Both the position numbers and the translations under genes were made by a program. This document shows, in pieces, positions 16,414-30,900 of a stretch of 64,000 bases of DNA. Below the pieces are notes generated by a model. The model did not search any database. It saw nothing but the letters and a program-made list of their open reading frames with translations, and was not told where the DNA came from. The number at the start of each line of letters is the position of its first letter. Position 1 is the stretch's first letter. Source of the DNA: Ylistrum balloti (taxonomy: Eukaryota); NCBI RefSeq assembly GCF_031769215.1, contig NW_026782484.1, forward strand, positions 1,922,001 to 1,986,000. The letters run 5' to 3'.

Positions 16414-17228
16414 TCATGCTCTTGACGGTGTATCTTTACCCACATTACATCTGTACCTAAACAAGCTGATAGCATCTCCGAGCACAATAACAACCACCAC
16501 ACTTATCAGGACCCCGGCGCCTAGTGATGCTCCCACAGTCGTGGCGCTCACGCGTTTATCGGGCGCACTGGTCAGTGATCGTATGTAAGAAGATGTTACT
16601 TTCTTATCTATAGTAAGTTCTTTCTTGAGTTCGTTTAGTTTTTCTTCTATCGTTTTATTGGAAGTTGGCACTTGTACACATCGACAATGGCACTGAGATA
16701 TGGGTCCAACGCTTGTGGTATCTGTAGTTGTTGTCGTTTCTGAAGTTGTAGCGGTTTCCGGAGTTGTATTGGTTGTCGGTGTTGTAATAGTTGTCGGTGT
16801 TGTAGTAGTTGTCGGTGTTGTCGGAGTTGTCTGAGTTGTAGTGGTGGTTTGAGTTGTTGGTGTTGTCTGAGTTGTAGTGGTGGTTGGAGTTGTTGGTGTT
16901 GTCTGAGTTGTAGTGGTGATTGGAGTTGTAATGGTTGTTGGAGTTGTAGTGGTGGTTGGAGTTGTAGTAGTTGATGGAGTCGTAGTAGTTGTTGGTGTCG
17001 TAGTGGTTGTTGGAGTCGTAGTGGTTGTTGGAGTTGTAGTGGTTGTTGGAGTTGTAGTAGTTGTTGGAGTTGTAGTAGTTGTTGGAGTCGTAGTGGCTGT
17101 TGGTGTTGTAGTAGTTGTTGGTGTTGTAGTGGTTGTTTGAGTTGTTGTTGGTGGTGTTGTAGTCAATAAAGAGCAAACTGCTGCATCCGTACTTGAACTG
17201 GGGATGGACCCGGTTACTACTCCGGGTT
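16414..17228 (-). CDS. Gene A last exon: Thr/Pro mucin stalk, CxCxC + juxtamembrane motif, TM helix, short tail. Gene A = complement(join(16414..17228,17787..18098,19481..19719,21296..21485,22241..22286,22509..22511)), 534 aa
   Basis: ttttatttcag acceptor; (TTTTTP)n; CHCRC...ELTIDKKVTSSYIRSLTSAPDKRVSA; hydrophobic LGAGVLISVVVVIVLG; phases of all six exons sum to 1605 nt. Confidence 0.88.
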
Positions 17229-17786: not shown

Positions 17787-18098
17787 CGTCATAACATCTT
17801 TTCCAGCTGACGAAAGAATCCAGACCGTGGTCGGTGATGTGATTTTCGTTGCAAGAAACCTGGTATTCGGATGTGTCAGCATCGAATCGGAATGGCTCTT
17901 CATGGATAGACGGAGCACATTTCTGGCTACTGTTAATGTAGGTGACAGCCCAGCACTCGCCATTTCTTTTACTCCTCGCCATTATTTCACTACAGTACTT
18001 CTCGCACGCGCTTCTATTTGGTGTAGTAATAATCCAAGAATCGTCAACCCCTTTTGTACAGGCACCCTCAGTGCTATCTCGTTCGTAAGTACAAGGAC
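17787..18098 (-). CDS. Gene A PAN/apple-like domain exon
   Basis: 312 nt phase 1-1; GPCTYERD..C..ACEKYC..ECWAVTY..C..C..SWKRCYD; donor G|GTGAGA; paralogous to 52856-53170 and 59149-59460. Confidence 0.88.
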
Positions 18099-19480
18099 CT
18101 GTCTCAGAAATGTAAAGATGCCATCTAGAAGTCGCTTGGTTATATTGTATTGATACATAACGATAGAACATCTGTTGATGAAATAGCCAACGGAAGTACA
18201 ACACAAAATGATGAAGAATGTCAAAATAAGCGATTATACTGTAGCTTAGCACTATACATCTCAAGAAAATTGATGTCATTGTATAATCTCTGCAAACATT
18301 TGTGGAGATATTGATATTAAAATAGAATTTTAAGGGTTTACATGCAACAAATAATTTCTAAAAATACATGAACATTTACTTTATACGAACCATGTCGTTT
18401 AACCAGCCACGTGGTTCCAGATAACATCTCGACCTTTAACACGAACAGGTCTCCACATTGTCACATAAAACAAGTTCATGGTAATGCATGTTAAATGTCA
18501 GAGATTATATAGCAACAATATTCGCTTGTGTGTCTTTTGTGAAATCGTTGTAACTTTGACCATGTTGTATTTCATCAATGAAATAATATTTTCTATTGTT
18601 TTTGATGATCAAAATGCGCTGCTGATATTCGCTGCTTTCCTATGCACTTTCGACACACAAACTACAATTTGATGAAGTCCCTTAGTACTGCTTCATGATT
18701 ATACTTTTGTGAAATGATTGATGAGATACAAGGCAATACTGAACAAATTATATAAAATTTCGAATGTATAATACAAGGAGACACATGCATGACACGTGGC
18801 AACATACGTTTTGAAAAGATTGCTATTGTATTTGCCATTCCTGAAAATCCTCATGTAGCATTTCAGCTTGATTGGACAATATGTGAACTTTGACCTATCA
18901 AATGCCATGATTATGGTTCCACAGTAATGGTGATGGAAACACCTAATTTGTCAGATTATAGGCTTCCTATCTTAACTCAAGGACTGGTGAGCTATACGCT
19001 ATTACACATGTGTTGAGTTACTGGGATACTTTACCGACCAAATTTTCAGCAAAGCAACGTGTATGCACATTAACAATGTGTGCTTAATATTCATGTAAAG
19101 TTTCATTTAAATTAGTTTAAGAGATGTTGCTCAATCGAATCTGCTCTTGGTAATCAAAGCAACCAATTGACAACCAATGTTTTGGAAAATAGTACCATTT
19201 CACAAAATCCTTATCTGCACACAGAATCCTCCATCATAGATTTATAGTAGTGGTTCTGGAAACACAAAATATTTCAACTAAGAGATCTCCATACTTTGAC
19301 CACTTCATCAAGTTTGAATGAAGTTGATCTAAGAGCAGAGTGCCTAGTGACTAGACAAGCTGTCGTTGCGGGGGTATATTTTCCTGATCGTGTTATGCTG
19401 TTATTGATAAAGATAGACATTTGATTACAAAACTGTGTTTCTATCGTTGTATTTTATCAAGAAGGAAAACATCTTCTTAC

Positions 19481-19719
19481 CAATGTCCTCTTGGCAGACC
19501 GCCTTAAAGCCGTTTAGCATGCAATCGACCAACTCCCATTTCATATCACCTTTTTGCGCTCTGCCACAAAGTTCAGTTCCATCAAGACTACCAGAAGCAG
19601 GAATACCGTCCTTGAATCGTTCGAACGAGGTTACATCGACCGTTTCACAACTGCCATCCCATATAAATGATGGTGTGAGGTAATTCATTACGTACATACC
19701 GAACCAGTAGTCAACATCC
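19481..19719 (-). CDS. Gene A C-type-lectin-like domain, second exon (most distal acceptor shown; 22 further upstream acceptors exist)
   Basis: tttttgtag|(W)DVDYWFGMYV...FIWDGSC...LCG...WELVDC...AVCQEDIG|gtaaga; 239 nt phase 2-1. Confidence 0.85.
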
Positions 19720-20545
19720 CTACAAAAATGCATACGGAACCAGTAGTCAACATCCCTACAAAAATACATACCAAACAAGTAGTCAACATCCCTACAAAAA
19801 TACATACCAAACCAGTAGTCAACATCCCTACAAAAATACATACCAAACAAGTAGTCAACGTCCCTACAAAAATACATACCAAACCAGTAGTCAACATCCC
19901 TACAAAAATACATACCAAACAAGTAGTCAACGTCCCTACAAAAATACATACAGAACCAGTAGTCAACATCCCTACAAAAATACATACCAAACCAGTAGTC
20001 AACATTCCTACAAAAATACATACCAAACAAGTAGTCAACGTCCCTACAAAAATACATACCAAACAAGTAGTCAACGTCCCTACAAAAATACACATCGAAC
20101 CAATAGTCAACGTCCCTACAAAAATACATACCAAACCAGTAGTCAACATCCCTACAAAAATACATACCAAACCAGAAGTCAACATCCCTACAAAAATACA
20201 TACCAAACAAGTAGTCAACATCCCTACAAAAATACATATCGAACCAGTAGTCAACATCCCTACAAAAATACATACAGAACCAGTAGTCAACGTCCCTACA
20301 AAAATACATACAGAACCAGTAGTCAACGTCCCTACAAAAATACATACAGAACCAGTAGTCAACATCCCTACAAAAATACACATCGAACCAGTAATCAACA
20401 TCCCTACAAAAATACATACAGAACCAGTAGTCAACATCCCTACAAAAATACATACAGAACCAGTAGTCAATGTCACTACAAAAATACACATCGAACCAGT
20501 AGTCAACATCCCTACAAAAATACATACAGAACTAGTAGTAAGCGT
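19693..20545 (-). repeat. 36-bp minisatellite (23 units) built from the intron/exon junction of the gene A lectin exon
   Basis: Minus-strand unit atttttgtag|GGATGTTGACTACTGGTTCGGTATGT; stop-free, in frame with the exon (DVDYWFGMYFCR). Confidence 0.95.
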
Positions 20546-20814
20546 CCTTATATAAATACATCAAACCGAACCAGACCAGTAGTCAAACGTTCCTACAAAG
20601 ATACATACCGACTGACTTACGTAAGAGAAATCAAAAGTTTTCATTCAAGTACATTTATGTTATCATCATGTATAAAGAAAAACACGTTTGTTTATAACCT
20701 ATCAATATTAGACAGTGGCTAGAAATCAACAATAAAAATGATCAGTTTGTGGTGAAAATAAATTTCAGCATCATTTCTCCATCCTGTATTAGAAAGACAA
20801 CTTATCATCAATGA

Positions 20815-21106
20815 TCATACTTCTCCTACCTAACTACAGAGTTGAGTGTATACTTCTCCTCTTACCCATCTACAGAGTTGAGTGTATACTTCTCCTCTTA
20901 CCCATCTACAGAGTGGAGTGTATACTTCTCCCCTTACCTATCTACAGAGTGGAGTGTATACTTCTCCTCTTACCCACCTACAGAGTGGAGTGTATACTTC
21001 TCCCCTTGCCTATCTACAGAGTGGAGTGTATACTTCTCCCCTTACCTATCTACTGAGTTGAGTGTGTACTTCTCCCCTTACCTATCTACAGAGTTGAGTG
21101 TATACT
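20815..21106. repeat. 36-bp minisatellite (~8 units) in gene A lectin-domain intron
   Basis: Unit gtatacttctcctcttacccatctacagagtggagt. Confidence 0.95.
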
Positions 21107-21295
21107 GACATACAATTTAAATATCGAGGATGTCAATGACGATTCTTTTAATAAAAATATACATTGCAAACATATTTATTTCGGGTGTTCAGTAGTCTTT
21201 AAATAAAGTATAAATCAGAACTAAGACTTTTGACTTATTGATGTCGTTAGAGAAAACAATATGAACTATTAAATGAGAAACTAAAACGGATATAC

Positions 21296-21485
21296 CAATT
21301 ATGTGTTTTCCAATAATTGTCGCTATCTTTGTACAATTTGACCATTTTCTGATTGGCTTCCGACTTGTCGTCCAATAGTCTTGTGTGATTGATATAGCAG
21401 TACGAGGATGCGTCATACCATGATGAATACACTGACACGAAAATCAACTTCCGCCTCAGAGTCGTGGGTGGATAGGAATTTCCAA
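21296..21485 (-). CDS. Gene A C-type-lectin-like domain, first exon
   Basis: ttttctag|..GNSYPPTTLRRKLIFVSVYSSWYDASSYC..RLL..HNW|gtatat; W-x-x-A-x-x-x-C helix motif; 190 nt phase 1-2. Confidence 0.85.
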
Positions 21486-22240
21486 CTAGAAAATACAAGA
21501 ATGTTGTAAACTCGTGAATATTTCTATATTCAACCAATATTTCATCAACTTTTGTTGCTATAGTAATAAACACTGACAAGACAGTAATGATAACATGATT
21601 ATCATTATTTTCACCAATTGAAAACTCCTATATGTTTAAGAATAATCTCTTTAATACACGATTTTATATGAATTCTCAAGTGATATTTATAAAAACGCTC
21701 TCACATTACTAATTTGCTTTGATAATTCCCAAATAAATTATGGTTTAAACAAACTTTGCAAGTTTCTAGGATTGTCTTTAAATTTTGCTTTTAATAGTAA
21801 AATTTCAATGGTCAATGTGTTATCTCATCTAAAAACAAAATCATAGCCATTGTTTTCACCAACATAAAAACAAATTGCGGATTTCAACTATATTTTCTAG
21901 TGTCATTTAACCGTTGTAGAATAATTAGCAATAAACAATACCATATATGAATACGTATCTTAAGTTATGTAGCTGCACATACATTTATGGATATGAAGTA
22001 TTTTTTTCATGAAAAGTGATATCAACTGTGGAACCGCTCCGATTTTGTCATCCGTCCTTACTCATTATTGCTGTTCTGCGAGTTTTTTTTTTGTTTTTGT
22101 TTTTGTTTTTTTTCAAAATGTACATTATTGAATGGAAAGCTAAACTTAAAAGTTAAAGGACACAGGAACAATATGTTTTGAATGAAATCAGTAATAATAC
22201 ACCAACATGAACTTATTGAAAGCATCAAACGAGTGCTTAC

Positions 22241-23479: not shown

Positions 23480-26400
23480 ATTGTTATGACTGACTGACCC
23501 CTTTGCCTGACTACAGACTGTGCTGTGTTGTACCTGGATTATACTAGTATATATTAGGCTCAGATAGATTATGGCTACTTCAATCACTATCTAGTCAAAT
23601 TTAGAAAGGAGCTCAAATTCTGGAAACAGACTCAATGGTGTTTTTAAGGGTAACCCAAAAATATCTGTCAGACAGGAAAATCGTTAGCTTGTGGAGCGTC
23701 TAGAATGCCGTGTGTTTGAGCTAGAAAGAGCTAATGGTTTTCAGAAACATAAAGTCGTGCTACTGGATAAAGAAATTGTTAAAGGTCTAGACAGAATTTG
23801 AAAACTAGAGCTCAAGGAAAATGAACTTGAGCAACATAGTCGGAAAAACTAGAAGATGACAATGAAAACGAAAAAGGAGAATGAAGGGAAGTGGTGAACC
23901 TTATTAGAACACTAGAAAATGTTGGCACTTGTGAGGCAGATATAGACACAGCACACAGGCTTGGTGCATACAAAGGTAGACATTTGTGAGGCAGATATAG
24001 ACAGCATACAGGCTTGGTACATACAAAGGTAGACATTTGTGAGGCAGATATAGACACAGCACACAGGCTTGGTGCATACAAAGGTAGACATTTGTGAGGC
24101 AGATATAGACAGCATACAGGCTTGGTGCATACAAAGGTAGACATTTGTGAGGCAGATATAGACAGCAAACAGGCTTGGTACATACAAAGGTAGACATTTG
24201 TGAGGCAGATATAGACAGCATACAGGCTTGATACATACAAAGGTAGACATTTATGAGGCAGATATAGTCACAGCAAACAGGCTTGGTGCATACAAAGATA
24301 GACATTTGTGAGGCAGATATAGACACAGCACACAGGCTTGGTGCATACAAAGGTAGACATTTGTGAGGCAGATATAGACAGCAAACAGGCTTGGTACATA
24401 CAAAGGTAGACATTTGTGAGGCAGATATAGACAGCATACAGGCTTGGTACATACAAAGGTAGACATTTATGAGGCAGATATAGTCACAGCAAACAGGCTT
24501 GGTGCATACAAAGATGGGAAGTCACGTCCTATTATTTGTAAGTTTGTGTATCGTAGAAAGAAAATGGACATAATAAAAAGGAGAAAAGGACTGAAGGATA
24601 CTGGCAAAACAATCGTAGAAGATCTGACGTAGACAAATCGACAACGTCTGAAAAAGGAGTGAAGTGGAATGTGTTGAACGTACATGAAATACGGACGGTA
24701 AACAGTTTGCCTTGCCAAAAAAAAAAAAAAAAACCAAGAAAATACGGAGACTTTTCAGTAATACTCAATTGTCAGAACGTTACCTTCTCGATGAGACAAA
24801 AAGATGACATGTACATATTCAACTCATAAAGCTCCTTCCCCTTTTACAGGCCCCGAACGTTAAGTAACATAACCAGCATACACACTCGAGTTTTCCTCAT
24901 TTGATAACTAATATTGAATTCAAAATTTTACCTGCCGTAGATCTTTACTTCAAAAGCAAGGGAGTGAAATGACTTAATTTTAAATATTTCCTTTCTTCAA
25001 TTTGGTTTGCTTCCAAGTTGCTTATCCTGGCACGATGAATGTCATCTTATAAGTTCACACCCTAAAGTAATTTACTTAGACTATAACGTTTCATGTAATA
25101 TCAAGCAAATAGTAAAATGGATGAAAATGTTCTTTAATACATTTCCTTTATAATAATCAAGAAAAAATGGTAAAATTTTATTTAGATTTTGAGATGTATG
25201 GTATTTGTTTTTTCTCTTTCAGTTATTGCTACCTTTAATACAGTCTCGTTGTCTATCTGTGGTCTGTTAAGATGACCTTTTCAAAAGACTTGATAAAAAT
25301 ATATTAACATTGAAATCATAAAGAGACTTTCAGCTAATTGTCAGGGCATAGGTGACAAAAGTAAACGCCGTGATGTTTCCTCTTAAAAAATAGAAATTTC
25401 CATATTTATTGTATTCAAGATACTACTTTGACAGCAGGAACGGAAAAAAATTATGTGAATGAGGATTTACTTGCCATTTCAATTCAATTAGATGAAATTC
25501 AACATGTGTTGCAATTTTAGTTAACAAAAGTTTTGAAGTGAAAGTTATGAAGGGAAAAAGAGATGTTGAAGGGAACTTTATTGCTGTAGATTTATAAATA
25601 GCCGCCGGAAAAATGTAACGTTAATAAAAGTCTATTGACCCAATACAGACAGACCAGAGTTCTATGACATAATTTCAGAGGCTATTCAAGATTTCAACAA
25701 TGCCTTCTATATAATATGTGGTGAATTTGATTTGGTTTTGATCCTGATTTAGACTATGATCAAAATTATGAATGGATCAATAATCCCAAAGCTAGAGATA
25801 AAGTGATTGAACTTATAGCAAAAGTTGCTTTAGTCGATATTTACAGACAGCAACATCCAGATAGTAGAAGTATACATGGAATAGAACTATGCCTATTATA
25901 CGAACTCGTCTTGATTTCTTTTTAATATCTGATAACATGTTAAGTAATACACAGAGTGCAAATTTAGATATCAGTCTGATCATTCCTTACCTATTATATC
26001 AATTAAATTTAATGATTGCAGAAAATATATCTTTATATTATATAGACAAAATATTTTTGATCAAGAAAACCGTAATTTCACTTATGAAATTATTCCATTT
26101 GTAGAAAAAGAAAACGGGGAAACTATTTCAAAACAAGAAGATATTTTAAATGAAGTAAGAGAATTTTATGAAAAATTGTATTCAAGTGATAGTAATATTG
26201 AACATATAAATCTTGATACTTAAGTAAATAGCGATGATAATAATATTTCAAAATTAAATAAGTCAGAATCTTTACTATTAGAGGGAATGATATTTATTGA
26301 AGAAACTTCACATACTTTGTCCTCGGTCAGATGGTTTCACTGCTGAATTTTTAAAATGTTTTTGGGGTAAATTGATAAATTTTGTGATAAGATCGATTAA

Positions 26401-27600
26401 TTATGGATTTATTAATAGTAGATTAAGTCAAAGGCCGGTAATCATTACATGTATACCTAAGGGAGACAAACCAAGGCAGTTAAAAAAAATGAAGACCAAT
26501 TTCTTTACTCAATATTATATATAAAATACCCTCAGGGTCAATAGCAAGTAGACTTAAAAACTTGTAGACAAATTAATGAATAGAGAACAAACTGGTTTTA
26601 TTGCAGGTAGGTATATCAAGGGAATTACAAGGCTAATTTATGATATCATGGAGCATGCGGAAGAAAATGAAATGCCTAGTATGCTTTTATTCATAGATTT
26701 TGAAAAGGCCTTCGATTATGTTGGTTGGGATTTTATCAATAATATTCTTTCATGTTTTGTTATTTTTGAGTTGATATAAGCAAGTAGATAAAACTCGACA
26801 TGCCAGTGTATCTTCTTCTATAAATCAAGGAAGCACTCTTTCATAAGACAGGTTGTCTTCAGGAGAACCTATTGCTTCTTATATTTTCATATTATGTGTT
26901 GTAATATTTACTATTAGAATATCCATTGTATAAACATAGATAACGTTCCAGTTCTATTATCACAATATGCAGATGATACATAAATTATTTTAGAATATCT
27001 TTAAAGGAATCGTTCCATGAACTAAATAACTTTGCAAAATGTTTTTGTCTAAAAGTAAATAAAGGCAAAACACAGGAATAAATATAGCATTGACATTTAA
27101 TTTCCAGAGTGGAATTTACCAATGAGAATTACTAAATTTACAGTGTTAGGTATTGTGTTTGATATGGACCTACACCAAATTCCGAGACTTAACTATGTTA
27201 AAAAATTGGTAAAGCTTAAAATCATTAATTAACACCTGGAACACGATTCTTACACTTCTTGGAAGACTACATATCCCTTTTCATATCTCAATTCAACAAT
27301 CTTTTCATATCCATGCCAAATCCATGCGATTTTTTTTTATAAGAAACGGGACTTACAATGATACACTTACAATCTTTTGTTGACTCATTGAAACTGCCTG
27401 GTGACGTAGGCTGTATACAACAGATGGAAAATGACATATATTCTTTGACAGATATGGAAACTAGGATATTTTAGCAAGTTATGGTAATAATTATAATCAT
27501 AAATGCCAACAAAACTGTAAAAATTCATTTTGGAAAGACATATCAAAAAATGGATTGCCTTGAATATACATATGAAGCCATTCTTAAAATTGCCCTAATA
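23480..27600 (+). mobile_element. Decayed Tx1/L1-type LINE (ORF1 about 23.5-24.7 kb; APE endonuclease and RT about 25.3-27.1 kb)
   Basis: ORF1 DIDTAHRLG, RPIICKF, EDLT; endonuclease SANCQGI..KRRDV, YCIQDT, RLDFFLIS; RT DGFTAEF, QTGFI.GRYI, IDFEKAFD, QYADDT; many stops and frameshifts. Confidence 0.9.
23923..24515 (+). repeat. 55-57-bp minisatellite (~10 units) inside LINE ORF1
   Basis: Unit tgtgaggcagatatagac(ac)agca.acaggcttggt.catacaaaggtagacatt, i.e. the DIDTAHRLG coding segment. Confidence 0.9.
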
Positions 27601-28454
27601 ATCAAAGAAAGAGCAGTTGACAAAATGCGGCTGCCAGAGTGAATGCTAAGGACGATGCAAATGCTATGGCTTCAGCCTGAAGGGTGCACAGTTGTGTGCC
27701 TGCAAATGTGAGGACTAAAAGAAGAACCTATCGAAGCTGTACATCTACAGCAAGTCGTTTCCTGACTCAAACAACACACAAGTAAATCAGTTTCTTCTTC
27801 ACATTGTTCGAAAACACAGAATTGAAGTTAACATTACGTACCCTATATGTTGAGAAAGTGCAATCCCCATTATATCATTATAATGTTCAGTAATTTTTTA
27901 AAGATGATATTTTTTACTGCTGTAAAAAAAGAACAGTACGTTACTTGGACAAGGAGAACTTTTCCATATCAGAAAGCAGATATTATTCTAATGGTTCACA
28001 GTGGTTATCAATTAACATTGAATATCGAATTCAAAATTTGCAAGGGATTGATATTGGTTATCCCAATAAATACTCATATCGATCGATCAAGCACCATAAC
28101 TGTTTAATTACATTTTGGTATCAAAATTGGTACGATCCTATACCATTGAAATTACATCATATTCCATAATATTTATCACAGCATCATGAATGCAGCACCT
28201 TTGATAAAACGTTCTTTTACTCTCTCGTGCCACTTCCCGGACTTATGTCGGATATATTGGAATTACGTGATGTCATAGAATACTTGCACGAGTATGCAAT
28301 ATGATATTTTATCACTGTCACAAAGTGCAATTCGACGTTTACAAGAATAACACGTGATTGCGTGTAGACCAATCAGCATCTGACACAAAACTGAAAATAT
28401 GCGCCACGAATCGTCGACTTTAACAATACCTAGAAAATCATGGCCTAATCACAA

Positions 28455-29250
28455 TTTAACAGAGAGAAAACACTTGTCATTTGTCCTTTCACGATAGGCG
28501 AGGTGCACACCGCTGGAAAGGGAAAACACAGGTCATTGGTCCTTTTACGATAGGCGAGGTGCACACCGCTGGAGACCATTTCAATTTAACAGAGAGAAAA
28601 CACAGGTCATTTGTCCTTTCACGATAGGCGAGGTGCACACCGCTGGAGACCATTTCAATTTAACAGAGAGAAAACACTTGTCATTTGTCCTTTCACGATA
28701 GGCGAGGTGCACACCGCAGGAGGCCATTTTAATTTGAAAAAGGGAAAACACTTGTCATTTGTCCTTTTACGATAGGCGAGGTGCACACCGCAGGAGGCCA
28801 TTTTAATTTAACAGAGAGAAAATATTTGTCATTTGTCCTTTCACGATAGGCGAGGTGCACACCGCAGGAAAGGGAAAACACAGGTCATTTGTCCTTTCAC
28901 GATAGGCGAGGTGCACACCGCAGGAGGCCATTTTAATTTGAAAGAGAGAAAACACTTGTCATTTGTCCTTTTACGATAGGCGAGGTGCACACCGCAGGAG
29001 GCCATTTTAATTTGAAAGAGAGAAAACACTTGTCATTTGTCCTTTCACGATAGGCGAGGTGCACACCACTGGAGACCATTTTAATTTAACAGAGAGAAAA
29101 CACTGGTCATTTGTCCTTTTACGATAGGCGTGGTGCACACCGCAGGAGGCCATTTTAATTTGAAAGAGAGAAAACACTTGTCATTTGTCCTTTTACGATA
29201 GACGAGGTGCACACCGCAAGAGACCATTTCAATTTAACAGAGAGAAAACG
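28455..29250. repeat. ~74-bp tandem repeat with 56-bp deletion variants (~11 units)
   Basis: aaaacacttgtcatttgtcctttcacgataggcgaggtgcacaccgc recurring. Confidence 0.92.
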
Positions 29251-30099
29251 GAAAACACTTGGCAATCGTCCTTGTTTACGACAGTCGAGATGTATGCTGG
29301 TATCAATTATAACTGCGTAAAAAATGTTTGAATGATGTGTTGGATGCGGTATTAAAAAGCTACACGTTTCATGTGACTGCCTGATAAGTCTCTGTCACCA
29401 TGTCATCAATCACCACAATTAATCTAGTCGATCCTGACGTATCGTTGATTCGTTCATGCGACGTAACAATGATAGAAAATTGGTGAAATCTCGTATCCAC
29501 GGAAACGAACAACTGATAAGCATGTTGTTATACCTGAATGCATGATAGTAGCCAGGTAATCAATAATCAATTTAGTGACAGACCTTTTTTCTACCTTCAG
29601 ACTAGCATCGGGGTATGTCACTCCAATGATTCACTACTAAAATCTAAATAGTTTCCTGCTGTTGGGTGGCTAAAGAACGTCATGCAAGAGTATCCTGATG
29701 GGAAACTGTATAACGATTTTTATCTATCAATATATACCATAGTGTCGGATTCGTGTGAGTGTGGAGGTCGTCTGTAGTCAGAATGTATGGCTGTGTTTGC
29801 AGATCATATTTTTTTAAAACTGCAAACATTTTGATATTGCCAGTTTGCCAAAAGCACCAACCTATCTTGCAGCCAAGGAAACCGTCTTTTCTTCACTTTA
29901 TCCGATCTTATGATAACTGACTAATGATAAGAATGTTTGTCCAGGTCCCGTCACTTTACTAACAGCCATAACTTAAAAATGATTGAAACATTCGCGATTT
30001 TGTGAATTCAACAAGTTCCCGATAATTTACTTTCTGTTTTATAATTCTGAGTCCCCTTTGAAAGATTTAAAGTACGTGGTATTTATCTACACCCCAAGG

Positions 30100-30900
30100 G
30101 AGTCCCATATCAGTTGGTTAATTTGGCATATACAGGTGAACTTACCGCATGAGGGACTTGAAATTTAAAACGAAAAGAGAACACAATTCTGCTTTCCTTG
30201 ATCCTGATGTCAAATCAACACTTGAAAATTTACATGATAGGTATATTGCTTGCCTGCAAACAAGACTTTGTATTACACCTTGTTTACATGTTTCTGCTTA
30301 TGAAAAGAACTAGAATTGCCCGAGAACTAGGAAAACCCCTCCCTATACATTATCCAGTCTTCCTTATGCCTTATCCTTCTGGAAAGCCACAACCATGTCG
30401 AAGTTGATTCGATATTTAAAGATTTGTTCTCAATAACACGATTTATGTGCAATAAAAGGTATGTTCGTAAAGGGGTATGTATGGGGACCTTCTGTTACAA
30501 TATATGTATCAATTTGTGAAAACCTAAAATTAATTTTTGTTGCAATTTGTTTGATAAAAAAAACCATCAAATGATTGGATCATAAAGACCTTCCTCGTTT
30601 TTATTGGATAAGTAAAGCTCAAATGAATATATGTAAACAATATTTTATTCCTGTCTCGGCTAGTTGCTCAACCAAGTCTTTATCCAAGCTTATTTTAAAT
30701 TATAGCTTGAATTATAGATCATGATAATAGTCAAGCACAAAGATAAAATATATTGACATTGGAAATGTAAAAAAGTTGGCTGACAATGTCCTTATTGGCA
30801 AGATCTTTCAACAGACAACTGGTAAATTCTTTGGGAATAATTGTGCCTCCCTTTTGTCTGGCTAGAATTTGGGGACCTAATTTACTATGGAGTTCAGAAA
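30100..30900 (+). mobile_element. Rearranged Penelope-like RT fragments
   Basis: SAFLDPDV, LIRYLKICS and QQTTGKFFGNNCASLL (cf. QLIRYARACS, GIPMGTNCAPLL); order of motifs is scrambled. Confidence 0.55.

What the first reader, a model, noticed from the sequence alone, without database searches (positions are those of the whole stretch)
19481..20545. 23 in-frame tandem splice acceptors inside a lectin domain: a potential isoform dial
Seen: the 36-bp unit is the 3' splice site plus the first 26 nt of the exon (atttttgtag|GGATGTTGACTACTGGTTCGGTATGT), duplicated via gtatgta microhomology. All 23 copies keep tttttgtAG and the array has no stop in the coding frame. Any acceptor therefore gives an in-frame protein with 0-22 extra 12-aa units (DVDYWFGMYFCR; variants YLFG, YWFC, YWFD, FWFG). 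The repeated segment is the WIGL-equivalent core strand of the C-type lectin fold, and each unit adds a Cys. Many units also contain a donor-like G|GTATGT, whose use would shift frame (20-nt pieces). Established: the first AG after the branch point is usually favoured, so long forms are not implausible. Inference: combinatorial 3' splice choice plus VNTR alleles could diversify or switch off this receptor; it also resembles intron gain by tandem duplication caught in progress.
Basis: partly seen in the sequence, partly recalled or inferred. Interest (0 to 1): 0.85.

Follow-up and report, generated by a model that had tools for sequence, protein, structure and literature searches.

The report
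Splice-acceptor minisatellite in scallop lectin gene
An intron of a scallop lectin-like receptor gene ends in 23 tandem copies of its own splice acceptor plus the start of the next exon; this is a real example of a repeat type already described ("mirage" minisatellite), and it is most likely spliced out rather than used to make a ladder of protein forms.

Summary
On the minus strand, 19693-20561 is a 36-bp minisatellite (24 copies, 91% match). Each unit is the last 9-16 nt of the intron plus the first 20-27 nt of the exon that encodes the WIGL strand of a C-type-lectin-like domain. It gives 23 equally spaced acceptors, and the frame stays open through all of them. Contigs from four independent DNA runs enter the array from both flanks, so it is not an assembly artefact.

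The "isoform dial" reading is not supported:
- All relatives are collinear with the form made from the last acceptor.
- Variants among units show no coding constraint and hit the W and G of WIGL.
- An open frame is a likely by-product of a 36-bp unit that is mostly exon.
- The Argopecten irradians orthologue has a 37-bp x 173 array at the same acceptor, in the same register, full of stops.
- An A. irradians paralogue has an independent 58-bp x 19 array with a stop in every upstream copy.

This repeat class is known: amphioxus "mirages", where splicing stays normal, and the human F7 intron-7 repeat. Earlier follow-ups of this scan reported it many times on other DNA of this genome. No RNA data were available, so acceptor usage is inferred, not shown.

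The parts
19693..20561 (-). 36-bp 'mirage' minisatellite. It has 23 copies of the 3' splice-site module (branch-point-like TTGAC, T-rich tract, AG) plus the first 20-27 nt of exon B. The G of each AG lies at 20512 minus 36 times n.
   Evidence: TRF; unit table. Contigs of 4 independent DNA runs enter it from both flanks, and contigs inside the array have 3-8 times the flank depth.
20562..20630 (-). Two degenerate older copies at the 5' edge of the array, with indels and one acceptor-like tgtag at 20593.
   Evidence: Direct reading.
19481..19719 (-). Exon B, the second half of the C-type-lectin-like domain. It starts at the WIGL-equivalent DYWFGMY and ends at donor G|gtaaga.
   Evidence: Translation. 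It is 61% identical to P0001 residues 93-170 and collinear with P0001, P0004 and P0005.
21296..21485 (-). Exon A, the first half of the lectin-like domain. It ends in phase 2 ('tg') at donor |gtatat.
19720..21295 (-). The intron between exons A and B (1576 nt). More than half of it is the boundary array, and it also holds a second, unrelated 36-bp array.
20827..21106 (-). Second 36-bp minisatellite in the same intron (7.8 copies). Each unit carries a consensus-like donor AG|GTAAGG. It is not derived from either neighbouring junction.
17787..18098 (-). PAN/apple-domain exon of the same gene.
   Evidence: The PAN_1 hit in the orthologue P0001 is.
16414..17228 (-). Last exon: a Thr/Pro mucin-like stalk (itself an 18-bp coding minisatellite), a transmembrane helix and a short tail, ending at the stop codon.
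   Evidence: The C-terminus aligns with that of P0005.

Best explanation
This is a 'mirage' minisatellite: a tandem amplification of an exon-intron boundary, here the 3' splice site of an old intron plus the first 27 nt of the following exon. The gene encodes a membrane receptor with a C-type-lectin-like domain, a PAN domain and a mucin stalk, in a scallop. The array most likely arose by slippage between the GTATG(T/C)A in the intron and the GTATGTA in the exon. It then grew and turned over by unequal exchange in a genome where about a quarter of this window is minisatellite. It belongs to the intron. Productive mRNA uses the exon-proximal (last) acceptor at 19720, and the 22 upstream copies are pseudo-acceptors that stay largely silent. 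The open frame follows from the unit being 27 nt of coding sequence plus 9 stop-free intron bases (36 = 12 x 3). It is not a selected property.

Shown: the anatomy, its presence in independent DNA samples, the lack of coding constraint in the units, the 0-unit architecture of all relatives, and non-coding arrays at the same acceptor in Argopecten.

Inferred: which acceptor is used, and why. The likely reason is exon definition by the real exon body and its strong donor. A possible aid is that the GTATGT pseudo-donor, which sits 16 nt before every upstream acceptor, is disabled only in the last unit.
For: (1) Relatives P0001 (A. irradians), P0004 and P0005 (M. yessoensis) are collinear with the last-acceptor product across the junction, with no inserted unit. 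P0020 (P. maximus) has its intron at the same place.
(2) There are 13 variable columns among the 22 upstream units, spread 5/3/5 over codon positions. Nine changes are non-synonymous and 4 synonymous. W to L occurs in 6 units and G to C, D or R in 11, all in the WIGL core, while the real exon keeps the motif.
(3) Only about 7 of 108 possible single substitutions in the unit would make a stop, so having none is expected (my count). Several other frames are open as well.
(4) The syntenic A. irradians locus L001 has a 37-bp x 173 array that ends at the same acceptor, in the same register and about 61% identical per unit. Stops follow within 2-4 codons (median 4) of its acceptor-like sites.
(5) The A. 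irradians paralogue L003 has an independent 58-bp x 19 array of the same boundary, and 18 of its 19 acceptors run into a stop after 11-17 codons.
(6) Published precedent: amphioxus mirages, including an acceptor-side one in globin Gb6, do not disturb splicing. In human F7, only the exon-proximal site is used although the copies are functional. In CBS 844ins68, a duplicated 3' splice site, the distal copy (the downstream of the two identical sites) is selected.
(7) DNA contigs of 4 runs confirm both array borders.
Against: No RNA data exist in the tools for this species, so acceptor choice is untested. Every unit carries a plausible branch point (TTGAC, 27 nt before its AG), and the T-tract and AG are identical in 23 of 23 copies. 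By sequence alone the upstream sites are therefore as good as the real one, and the first one is transcribed first. The 10 nt ATTTTTGTAG never vary while 13 other columns do (p = 0.0045 for that block chosen beforehand; p = 0.08 for any 10-nt block). This could hint at constraint on the acceptors. Because the array is in frame, mis-spliced forms would escape nonsense-mediated decay and could be translated. The gene models of the relatives are predictions, not cDNAs.
Confidence: 0.75

Rival explanations
1. Isoform dial. Upstream acceptors are used at appreciable levels, giving receptors with 1-22 extra 12-residue units before the WIGL strand. Array length alleles would set the range.
For: All 23 acceptors are in frame, free of stops and identical in the last 10 nt, and each has its own branch-point-like TTGAC. 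Internal unit composition seems to differ between samples: bins 20070-20223 are empty in X3 and X5 but filled in X1 and X2. The insertion would precede the true strand rather than replace it, so short forms might still fold (inference).
Against: The units show no protein-level constraint. No relative has such an insertion. The arrays at the same acceptor in A. irradians are out of frame and full of stops, so any such function would be confined to this species and accidental. Each unit is hydrophobic, aromatic and adds one or two cysteines. Known mirages and the F7 repeat stay silent.
Confidence: 0.1
2. Expression modulator. The array does not diversify the protein. Instead its decoy acceptors and GTATGT pseudo-donors divert or slow splicing, for example through 20-nt micro-exons that shift the frame, so that copy number tunes the output of productive mRNA.
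For: There are 11 consensus-like G|GTATGT sites in the array, and GTATGT or GTATAT are the real donors of this intron in A. irradians and in the window. The same intron also holds 8 AG|GTAAGG sites. Arrays sit at this acceptor in two genera. In both species the last unit has lost the pseudo-donor.
Against: There are no expression data. P. maximus and M. yessoensis relatives do without any array. The window's own paralogues have unrelated arrays in the homologous intron that do not touch the acceptor. Earlier follow-ups of this scan judged such arrays about as frequent as random duplication would produce in this genome (not checked by me).
Confidence: 0.1
3. Dead gene. The locus is a silent or decaying paralogue, and the array is debris in a pseudogene.
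For: No clear signal-peptide exon was found. The only candidate is a short ATG exon at 21605 with weak donors. There is no RNA evidence. The A. irradians orthologue model has a frame-shifted stalk.
Against: All four recognised coding exons are open, with canonical AG/GT borders and matching phases, and the transmembrane tail is intact. Four independent samples show no frameshift in exons A or B, only one R to K, one S to F and one synonymous change. The exon keeps WFGMY while the copies decay.
Confidence: 0.04
4. Assembly artefact. The array is a mis-assembly or over-expansion.
For: Short-read contigs cannot span the array, so the copy number of 23 is unverified.
Against: Both flank-to-array junctions are present in 4 runs from 2 studies. 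These runs differ from the window at 4 shared SNPs, so they are not the assembled individual. Contigs inside the array have 3-8 times the flank depth. Similar arrays exist in an independent assembly of another genus.
Confidence: 0.01

Closest known systems
Amphioxus 'mirage' minisatellites (Adh3, troponin C, globins Gb6 and Gb9, PGBD5; Canestro et al. 2002, as cited in PMC3087553 and PMC3902484)
   Same: Both are tandem repeats whose unit spans an exon-intron boundary and so multiplies splice signals. The Gb6 case is also on the acceptor side (3' end of the intron plus the 5' part of the exon). Both show concerted evolution, with edge units left out of homogenisation.
   Different: The phylum differs (mollusc, not cephalochordate). 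The unit is shorter than in Gb6 (36 against 150-160 bp) and there are many more copies (23 here, 173 in the A. irradians orthologue). Here the period is a multiple of 3 and the frame stays open. An array also sits at the same acceptor in a second genus. Normal splicing was shown for amphioxus but could not be tested here.
Human F7 intron 7 37-bp VNTR (PMC1557585)
   Same: It is a minisatellite of nearly the same unit length whose first element spans an exon-intron boundary, giving a row of identical splice sites. Those copies are functional but silent, and only the exon-proximal site is used.
   Different: F7 multiplies the 5' splice site at the start of the intron. This array multiplies the 3' splice site with its branch point at the end of the intron. 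The 5'-to-3' scanning rule shown for donors cannot simply be carried over.
CBS 844ins68 (duplicated intron 7 / exon 8 acceptor; Romano et al. 2002, as cited in PMC1802585)
   Same: The 3' splice site plus the exon start is duplicated, and the distal copy (the downstream of the two identical sites) is selected, so the duplicate is removed with the intron.
   Different: It is a single duplication of 68 bp. The selection there depends on G runs between the sites, which are absent here.
NAGNAG and other tandem acceptors used for subtle alternative splicing (PMC2279118, PMC2699507)
   Same: These are in-frame alternative acceptors close together.
   Different: They lie 3-9 nt apart and share one branch point. 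Here each acceptor is 36 nt from the next and has its own branch-point-like site. Alternative use is documented for NAGNAG and not for this array.
Introns born from tandem arrays or duplications (Rogers' model; Zhuo et al. 2007, cited in PMC2812944; PMC3265369)
   Same: Tandem duplication puts donor-like and acceptor sites side by side.
   Different: No new intron is created here. A conserved intron is lengthened.

Membership tests
Mirage minisatellite (tandem repeat of an exon-intron boundary) | Head-to-tail tandem array with a minisatellite-sized unit | tested here: met
   Period 36, 24.1 copies, 91% match.
Mirage minisatellite (tandem repeat of an exon-intron boundary) | The unit contains both intron and exon sequence of the adjacent authentic boundary, so the splice signal is repeated | tested here: met
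   The unit is the last 9-16 nt of the intron, including AG, plus the first 20-27 nt of exon B. There are 23 AG sites in register.
Mirage minisatellite (tandem repeat of an exon-intron boundary) | The array abuts the authentic exon and lies on its intron side | tested here: met
   The last copy is the real exon start. Relatives define the junction.
Mirage minisatellite (tandem repeat of an exon-intron boundary) | Regular splicing is not disturbed | not testable with these tools
   No RNA run holds the locus.
Mirage minisatellite (tandem repeat of an exon-intron boundary) | Length or composition polymorphism between haplotypes | tested here: inconclusive
   Contigs inside the array differ between runs (bins 20070-20223 are empty in X3 and X5), but contigs cannot size arrays and gaps prove nothing.
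C-type lectin-like domain (Pfam PF00059) | Significant match to the Lectin_C profile | tested here: inconclusive
   The window's two exons searched singly give no hit. A spliced protein could not be submitted by reference. Relatives P0004, P0005 and P0020 pass the curated cut-off (33-39 bits against 22.6). The orthologue P0001 is just below it (20.0 bits).
C-type lectin-like domain (Pfam PF00059) | WIGL-type core strand and the conserved cysteine pairs | tested here: met
   DYWLGLY of P0004 aligns with WIGL of PLA2R and other solved domains. The window has DYWFGMY, and the cysteines of YC...C...C...VC are present in exons A and B.
C-type lectin-like domain (Pfam PF00059) | Ca2+/sugar-binding EPN or QPD plus WND motifs (needed for a true lectin, not for the fold) | tested here: not met
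   There is no EPN, QPD or WND in the exon B translation, so the fold assignment does not imply sugar binding.
Alternative tandem-acceptor splicing | Two or more of the acceptors are seen in transcripts | not testable with these tools
   No RNA. The protein databases hold no form with inserted units.
Intron gain by tandem duplication (Rogers model) | The intron is absent at this position in relatives | tested here: not met
   The intron has the same position and phase in the window's modules B and C and in loci L001-L004.

The most novel reading that the evidence does not exclude
In this scallop the array happens to be in frame and free of stops, so nonsense-mediated decay cannot remove transcripts spliced at upstream acceptors. 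A measurable ladder of receptor forms with 12-residue steps, set by array length alleles, would then be made and exposed to selection. This would be a first step towards a repeat-tuned immune-type receptor. A more modest and more likely version: mirage arrays persist at the same acceptor for the whole time since Ylistrum and Argopecten split, and selection for splicing fidelity shapes them. Two observations point that way. The pseudo-donor is lost only in the last unit in both species, and exon-derived TAGTGAC has changed to a perfect TACTAAC branch site in 144 of 173 Argopecten units.
Probability: 0.08. Interest if true: 0.75.

Novelty: new member of a known kind. Interest (0 to 1): 0.3.

Why it matters
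If the ordinary reading holds, this is one more clean example, on the acceptor side, of a boundary-derived minisatellite in a mollusc. The class has so far been described in print for amphioxus and a few human genes. I found no paper reporting it in scallops.

It is a natural test of how a spliceosome picks one site among 23 (or 173) near-identical complete 3' splice-site modules. This mirrors the human F7 donor model, and the scallop arrays offer natural variants in frame, copy number and pseudo-donor state.

The same-acceptor arrays in two genera show that such repeats can be long-lived or recurrent. That bears on how introns grow and how exon sequence turns into intron. For gene annotation it is a warning: the array forms a 366-codon ORF that a gene finder could take for coding sequence.

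Tried and rejected
- **RNA evidence.** The look-up of sequencing runs returned only 5 DNA runs kept as contigs and no RNA, so acceptor usage could not be read.
- **Annotated model of this gene.** A word-based protein search with exon B and with the orthologue found no model from this species and no protein with inserted units.
- **Pfam on single exons.** There was no Lectin_C hit. The array translation gave a sub-threshold LED_rpt match (46.6 against 59 bits), which I take as a repeat artefact.
- **RNA structure that might hide upstream acceptors.** Four units fold no better than shuffles (z = +0.62). Rejected.
- **Second 36-bp array in the intron (20827-21106) as a mirage of a neighbouring donor.** There is no meaningful similarity. 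Rejected.
- **Constraint on the acceptor block.** The invariant 10 nt give p = 0.0045 if the block is chosen beforehand but p = 0.08 for any 10-nt block. CpG sites explain several variable columns. I left this as a weak hint.
- **Signal-peptide exon.** Only a weak candidate was found (ATG at 21605).
- **Primary papers.** The primary mirage paper (PMC117041) and Zhuo et al. 2007 (PMC1783408) are not held. Both are cited through secondary sources.

Full report
**1. What is there**

All coordinates below are read on the minus strand. Tandem Repeats Finder reports a 36-bp array at 19693-20561, with 24.1 copies, 91% matches and no indels.

- There are 23 sites 'atttttgtag|G', with the G of AG at 20512, 20476 ... 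19720, exactly 36 nt apart.
- Two older, indel-bearing copies lie at the 5' edge, around 20513-20630.
- The last site is the acceptor of exon 19719-19481. The upstream exon is 21485-21296 and ends 'tg|gtatat', so the first G after an acceptor completes a Trp codon.
- The unit is the last 9-16 nt of the intron plus the first 20-27 nt of the exon.
- In the exon's frame the array has no stop and reads DVDYWFGMYFCR with variants.

**2. The gene**

The exons are 21485-21296, 19719-19481, 18098-17787 and 17228-16414. They have canonical borders and matching phases.

- Together they encode a C-type-lectin-like domain split over two exons, a PAN/apple domain, a Thr/Pro mucin-like stalk (itself an 18-bp coding minisatellite), a transmembrane helix and a short tail.
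- A search of 1.84 billion representative proteins with exon B found three relatives: P0001 (560 aa, 61% identity, Argopecten irradians), P0005 (Mizuhopecten yessoensis, 'mucin-5AC-like') and P0004 (A. irradians). P0020 (Pecten maximus) was found with P0005.
- P0004, P0005 and P0020 pass Pfam's Lectin_C cut-off. P0001 is just below it and also has PAN_1.
- In alignments to solved structures, DYWLGLY of P0004 lies on the WIGL strand. The repeated piece is therefore the WIGL-equivalent strand.
- No EPN, QPD or WND motif is visible in exon B. The fold does not imply sugar binding.
- Two diverged paralogous modules lie in the same window, with exon B at 60871-60653 and 53566-53336. They have the intron at the same place and a single ordinary acceptor each.

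**3. Is it real DNA?**

Contigs of four DNA runs from two studies were laid on 19300-21600.

- In every run one contig runs from the unique 3' flank to 19729 and another from 20503 into the unique 5' flank.
- Short contigs inside the array have depths of 40-112, against 14-18 (X5: 7-11) for the flanks.
- All four runs differ from the window at the same four positions (20706, 20719, 21149, 21455), so they are not the assembled individual.

The array is not an assembly artefact. Its exact copy number cannot be checked with contigs. Some internal unit combinations are missing in X3 and X5, which hints at allelic differences but proves nothing.

**4. Is the open frame meaningful?**

No, for four reasons.

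- Of the six frames of the array, two have no stop and two more have only one.
- The unit is 27 nt of real coding sequence plus 9 intron bases that happen to lack a stop. A third of all periods are multiples of three, and 9 of about 20 arrays in this window have such a period.
- Only about 7 of the 108 possible single substitutions in the unit would create a stop. The absence of stops among some 15 variant events is therefore expected (my count).
- The 13 variable columns fall 5/3/5 on codon positions 1/2/3. Nine changes are non-synonymous and four synonymous. They include W to L in six units and G to C, D or R in eleven, which are the most conserved residues of the WIGL motif. The real exon keeps them.

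The copies evolve as non-coding DNA.

**5. Comparative evidence**

All relatives are collinear with the product of the last acceptor. The junctions read ...HNW|DVDYWFGMY here...HDF|NSDYWFGMY in P0001 and ...SW|GNDYWLGLY in P0004 and P0005.

*A. irradians orthologue (L001).* This locus is syntenic with the window at 65-71% nucleotide identity.

- Its homologous intron is almost entirely a 37-bp x 173 array (24016-30406) that ends at the acceptor of exon B.
- Its units align with the window's units in the same register, with one 1-nt indel and about 61% identity.
- The units keep a GAT that the A. irradians exon has since changed to AAT. This favours an array older than the split of the two genera. 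Repeated seeding at the same conserved microhomology cannot be excluded.
- The period is not a multiple of three, and stops follow within 2-4 codons (median 4) of its acceptor-like sites.

*A. irradians paralogue (L003, P0004).* It has an independent 58-bp x 19 array made of the last 24-33 nt of its intron and the first 25-34 nt of exon B. Of its 19 acceptors, 18 hit a stop after 11-17 codons.

*Closest relatives of that gene.* Those in M. yessoensis (L002) and P. maximus (L004) have no array in this intron.

Boundary arrays at this acceptor are therefore either long-lived or recurrent. In the other two cases they cannot encode anything. A conserved 'dial' function is ruled out, and any coding use in the window species would be a recent accident.

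**6. Known class**

Earlier follow-ups of this scan name the genome Ylistrum balloti, which I did not verify. They reported many splice-junction minisatellites on other DNA of this genome, including an acceptor-side one in USP5, and called them 'mirages'. I checked the literature myself.

- Ebner et al. [quoted passage not shown] They state that the Adh3 and globin RT-PCR data suggest no interference with regular splicing, and they note that edge units escape homogenisation.
- Pavelitz et al. 2013 (PMC3902484) say the same for Adh, troponin C and PGBD5.
- The human F7 intron 7 37-bp VNTR is the donor-side mirror image. Its pseudo-sites are functional, but only the exon-proximal site is used (PMC1557585).
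- In CBS 844ins68, a duplicated 3' splice site, the distal copy (the downstream of the two identical sites) is chosen (PMC1802585).
- I found no paper on such arrays in scallops.

**7. How it most likely works**

*Shown.* Each unit is a complete 3' splice-site module.

- It has a branch-point-like TTGAC (invariant apart from one TTGAT), whose A lies 27 nt before the AG, then a T-rich tract, then the AG.
- Because an AG recurs every 36 nt, the branch point of the true acceptor must lie in the exon-derived part of the last unit.
- In A. irradians the corresponding exon-derived TAGTGAC has become a perfect TACTAAC in 144 of 173 units.
- Eleven units carry G|GTATGT. GTATGT and GTATAT are the real donors of this very intron in A. 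irradians and in the window.

*Inferred.*

- The last module wins because only it is followed by a real exon body (239 nt) and a strong donor (G|gtaaga), that is, by exon definition. The nearest donor downstream of an upstream module lies only 20 nt away, which is too close to define an exon.
- U1 bound at a pseudo-donor 16 nt before an AG would also overlap that AG's T-tract.
- In both species the last unit, and only that one in the window, has lost the pseudo-donor. It reads CCGTATGC here and GTATTT in A. irradians.
- This could be selection for the true acceptor, or only the usual divergence of edge units. The numbers are too small to decide.
- An RNA fold of four units is no better than shuffles (z = +0.62), so structure is not the explanation.

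**8. What remains open**

Without RNA, low or even moderate use of upstream acceptors is not excluded. Such transcripts would be in frame here and would escape nonsense-mediated decay. The last 10 nt of the unit never vary (p = 0.0045 for that block chosen beforehand, p = 0.08 for any 10-nt block). The start exon of the gene is not identified with confidence.

**9. Verdict**

- The origin by tandem duplication of the acceptor boundary is supported.
- The 'isoform dial' and 'intron gain in progress' readings are not supported.
- It is a new member of a known kind (mirage minisatellite) that this scan has already met repeatedly in this genome.
- Its modest extra value lies in three points: it is in frame, it sits in the core strand of a lectin-like domain, and a same-register array at the same acceptor exists in a second scallop genus.

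Noticed in passing
window 1-64000: About 20 distinct minisatellite arrays (periods 18-77 bp) cover roughly 17 kb, or 27% of the window (my sum over). This repeat-prone background makes boundary arrays likely.
   Followed up: partly
window 20827-21106 (-): A second 36-bp array lies in the same intron. Each of its about 8 units carries a consensus-like donor AG|GTAAGG. It is not derived from the neighbouring exon junctions.
   Followed up: partly
window 61152-61526 and 53939-56336: The homologous introns of the two paralogous lectin-PAN modules also hold minisatellites (25 bp x 14 and 50 bp x 48), but these do not include the acceptor.
   Followed up: partly
window 16726-17163 (-) and 51289-51919 (-): The mucin-like stalks of the receptors are themselves coding minisatellites: an 18-bp unit giving TTTPTT-type repeats, and a 45-bp unit in module C. 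The same gene family therefore carries both coding and intronic arrays.
   Followed up: no
L001 24016-30406 (Argopecten irradians): The 37-bp x 173 array fills nearly the whole 6.5-kb intron. 144 of its units hold a perfect TACTAAC and 162 hold GTATGT, so each unit looks like a miniature intron.
   Followed up: partly
L001 31711-32343; P0001 residues about 400-560: The A. irradians gene model reads its 30-bp stalk repeat first as TTSTSTVPP and then in another frame (QQQRLHLRYR), and it lacks the transmembrane end. This is either a frameshift in the assembly or gene, or a faulty model.
   Followed up: no
L001 23258-23495: A microsatellite of about 79 copies of ATC lies in the intron after the signal-peptide exon of the A. 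irradians orthologue.
   Followed up: no
window 19594, 19605, 21455: There are coding polymorphisms between samples. 19594 gives S to F in exon B (runs X1, X3). 19605 is synonymous (X2). 21455 gives R to K in exon A in all four runs relative to the window, and K is also the residue in P0001.
   Followed up: partly
window 21573-21605 (-): A candidate start exon reads ATG...MIIMLSLLSCQ, with weak phase-1 donors about 90 nt before exon A. The signal peptide of this gene is otherwise not located.
   Followed up: partly
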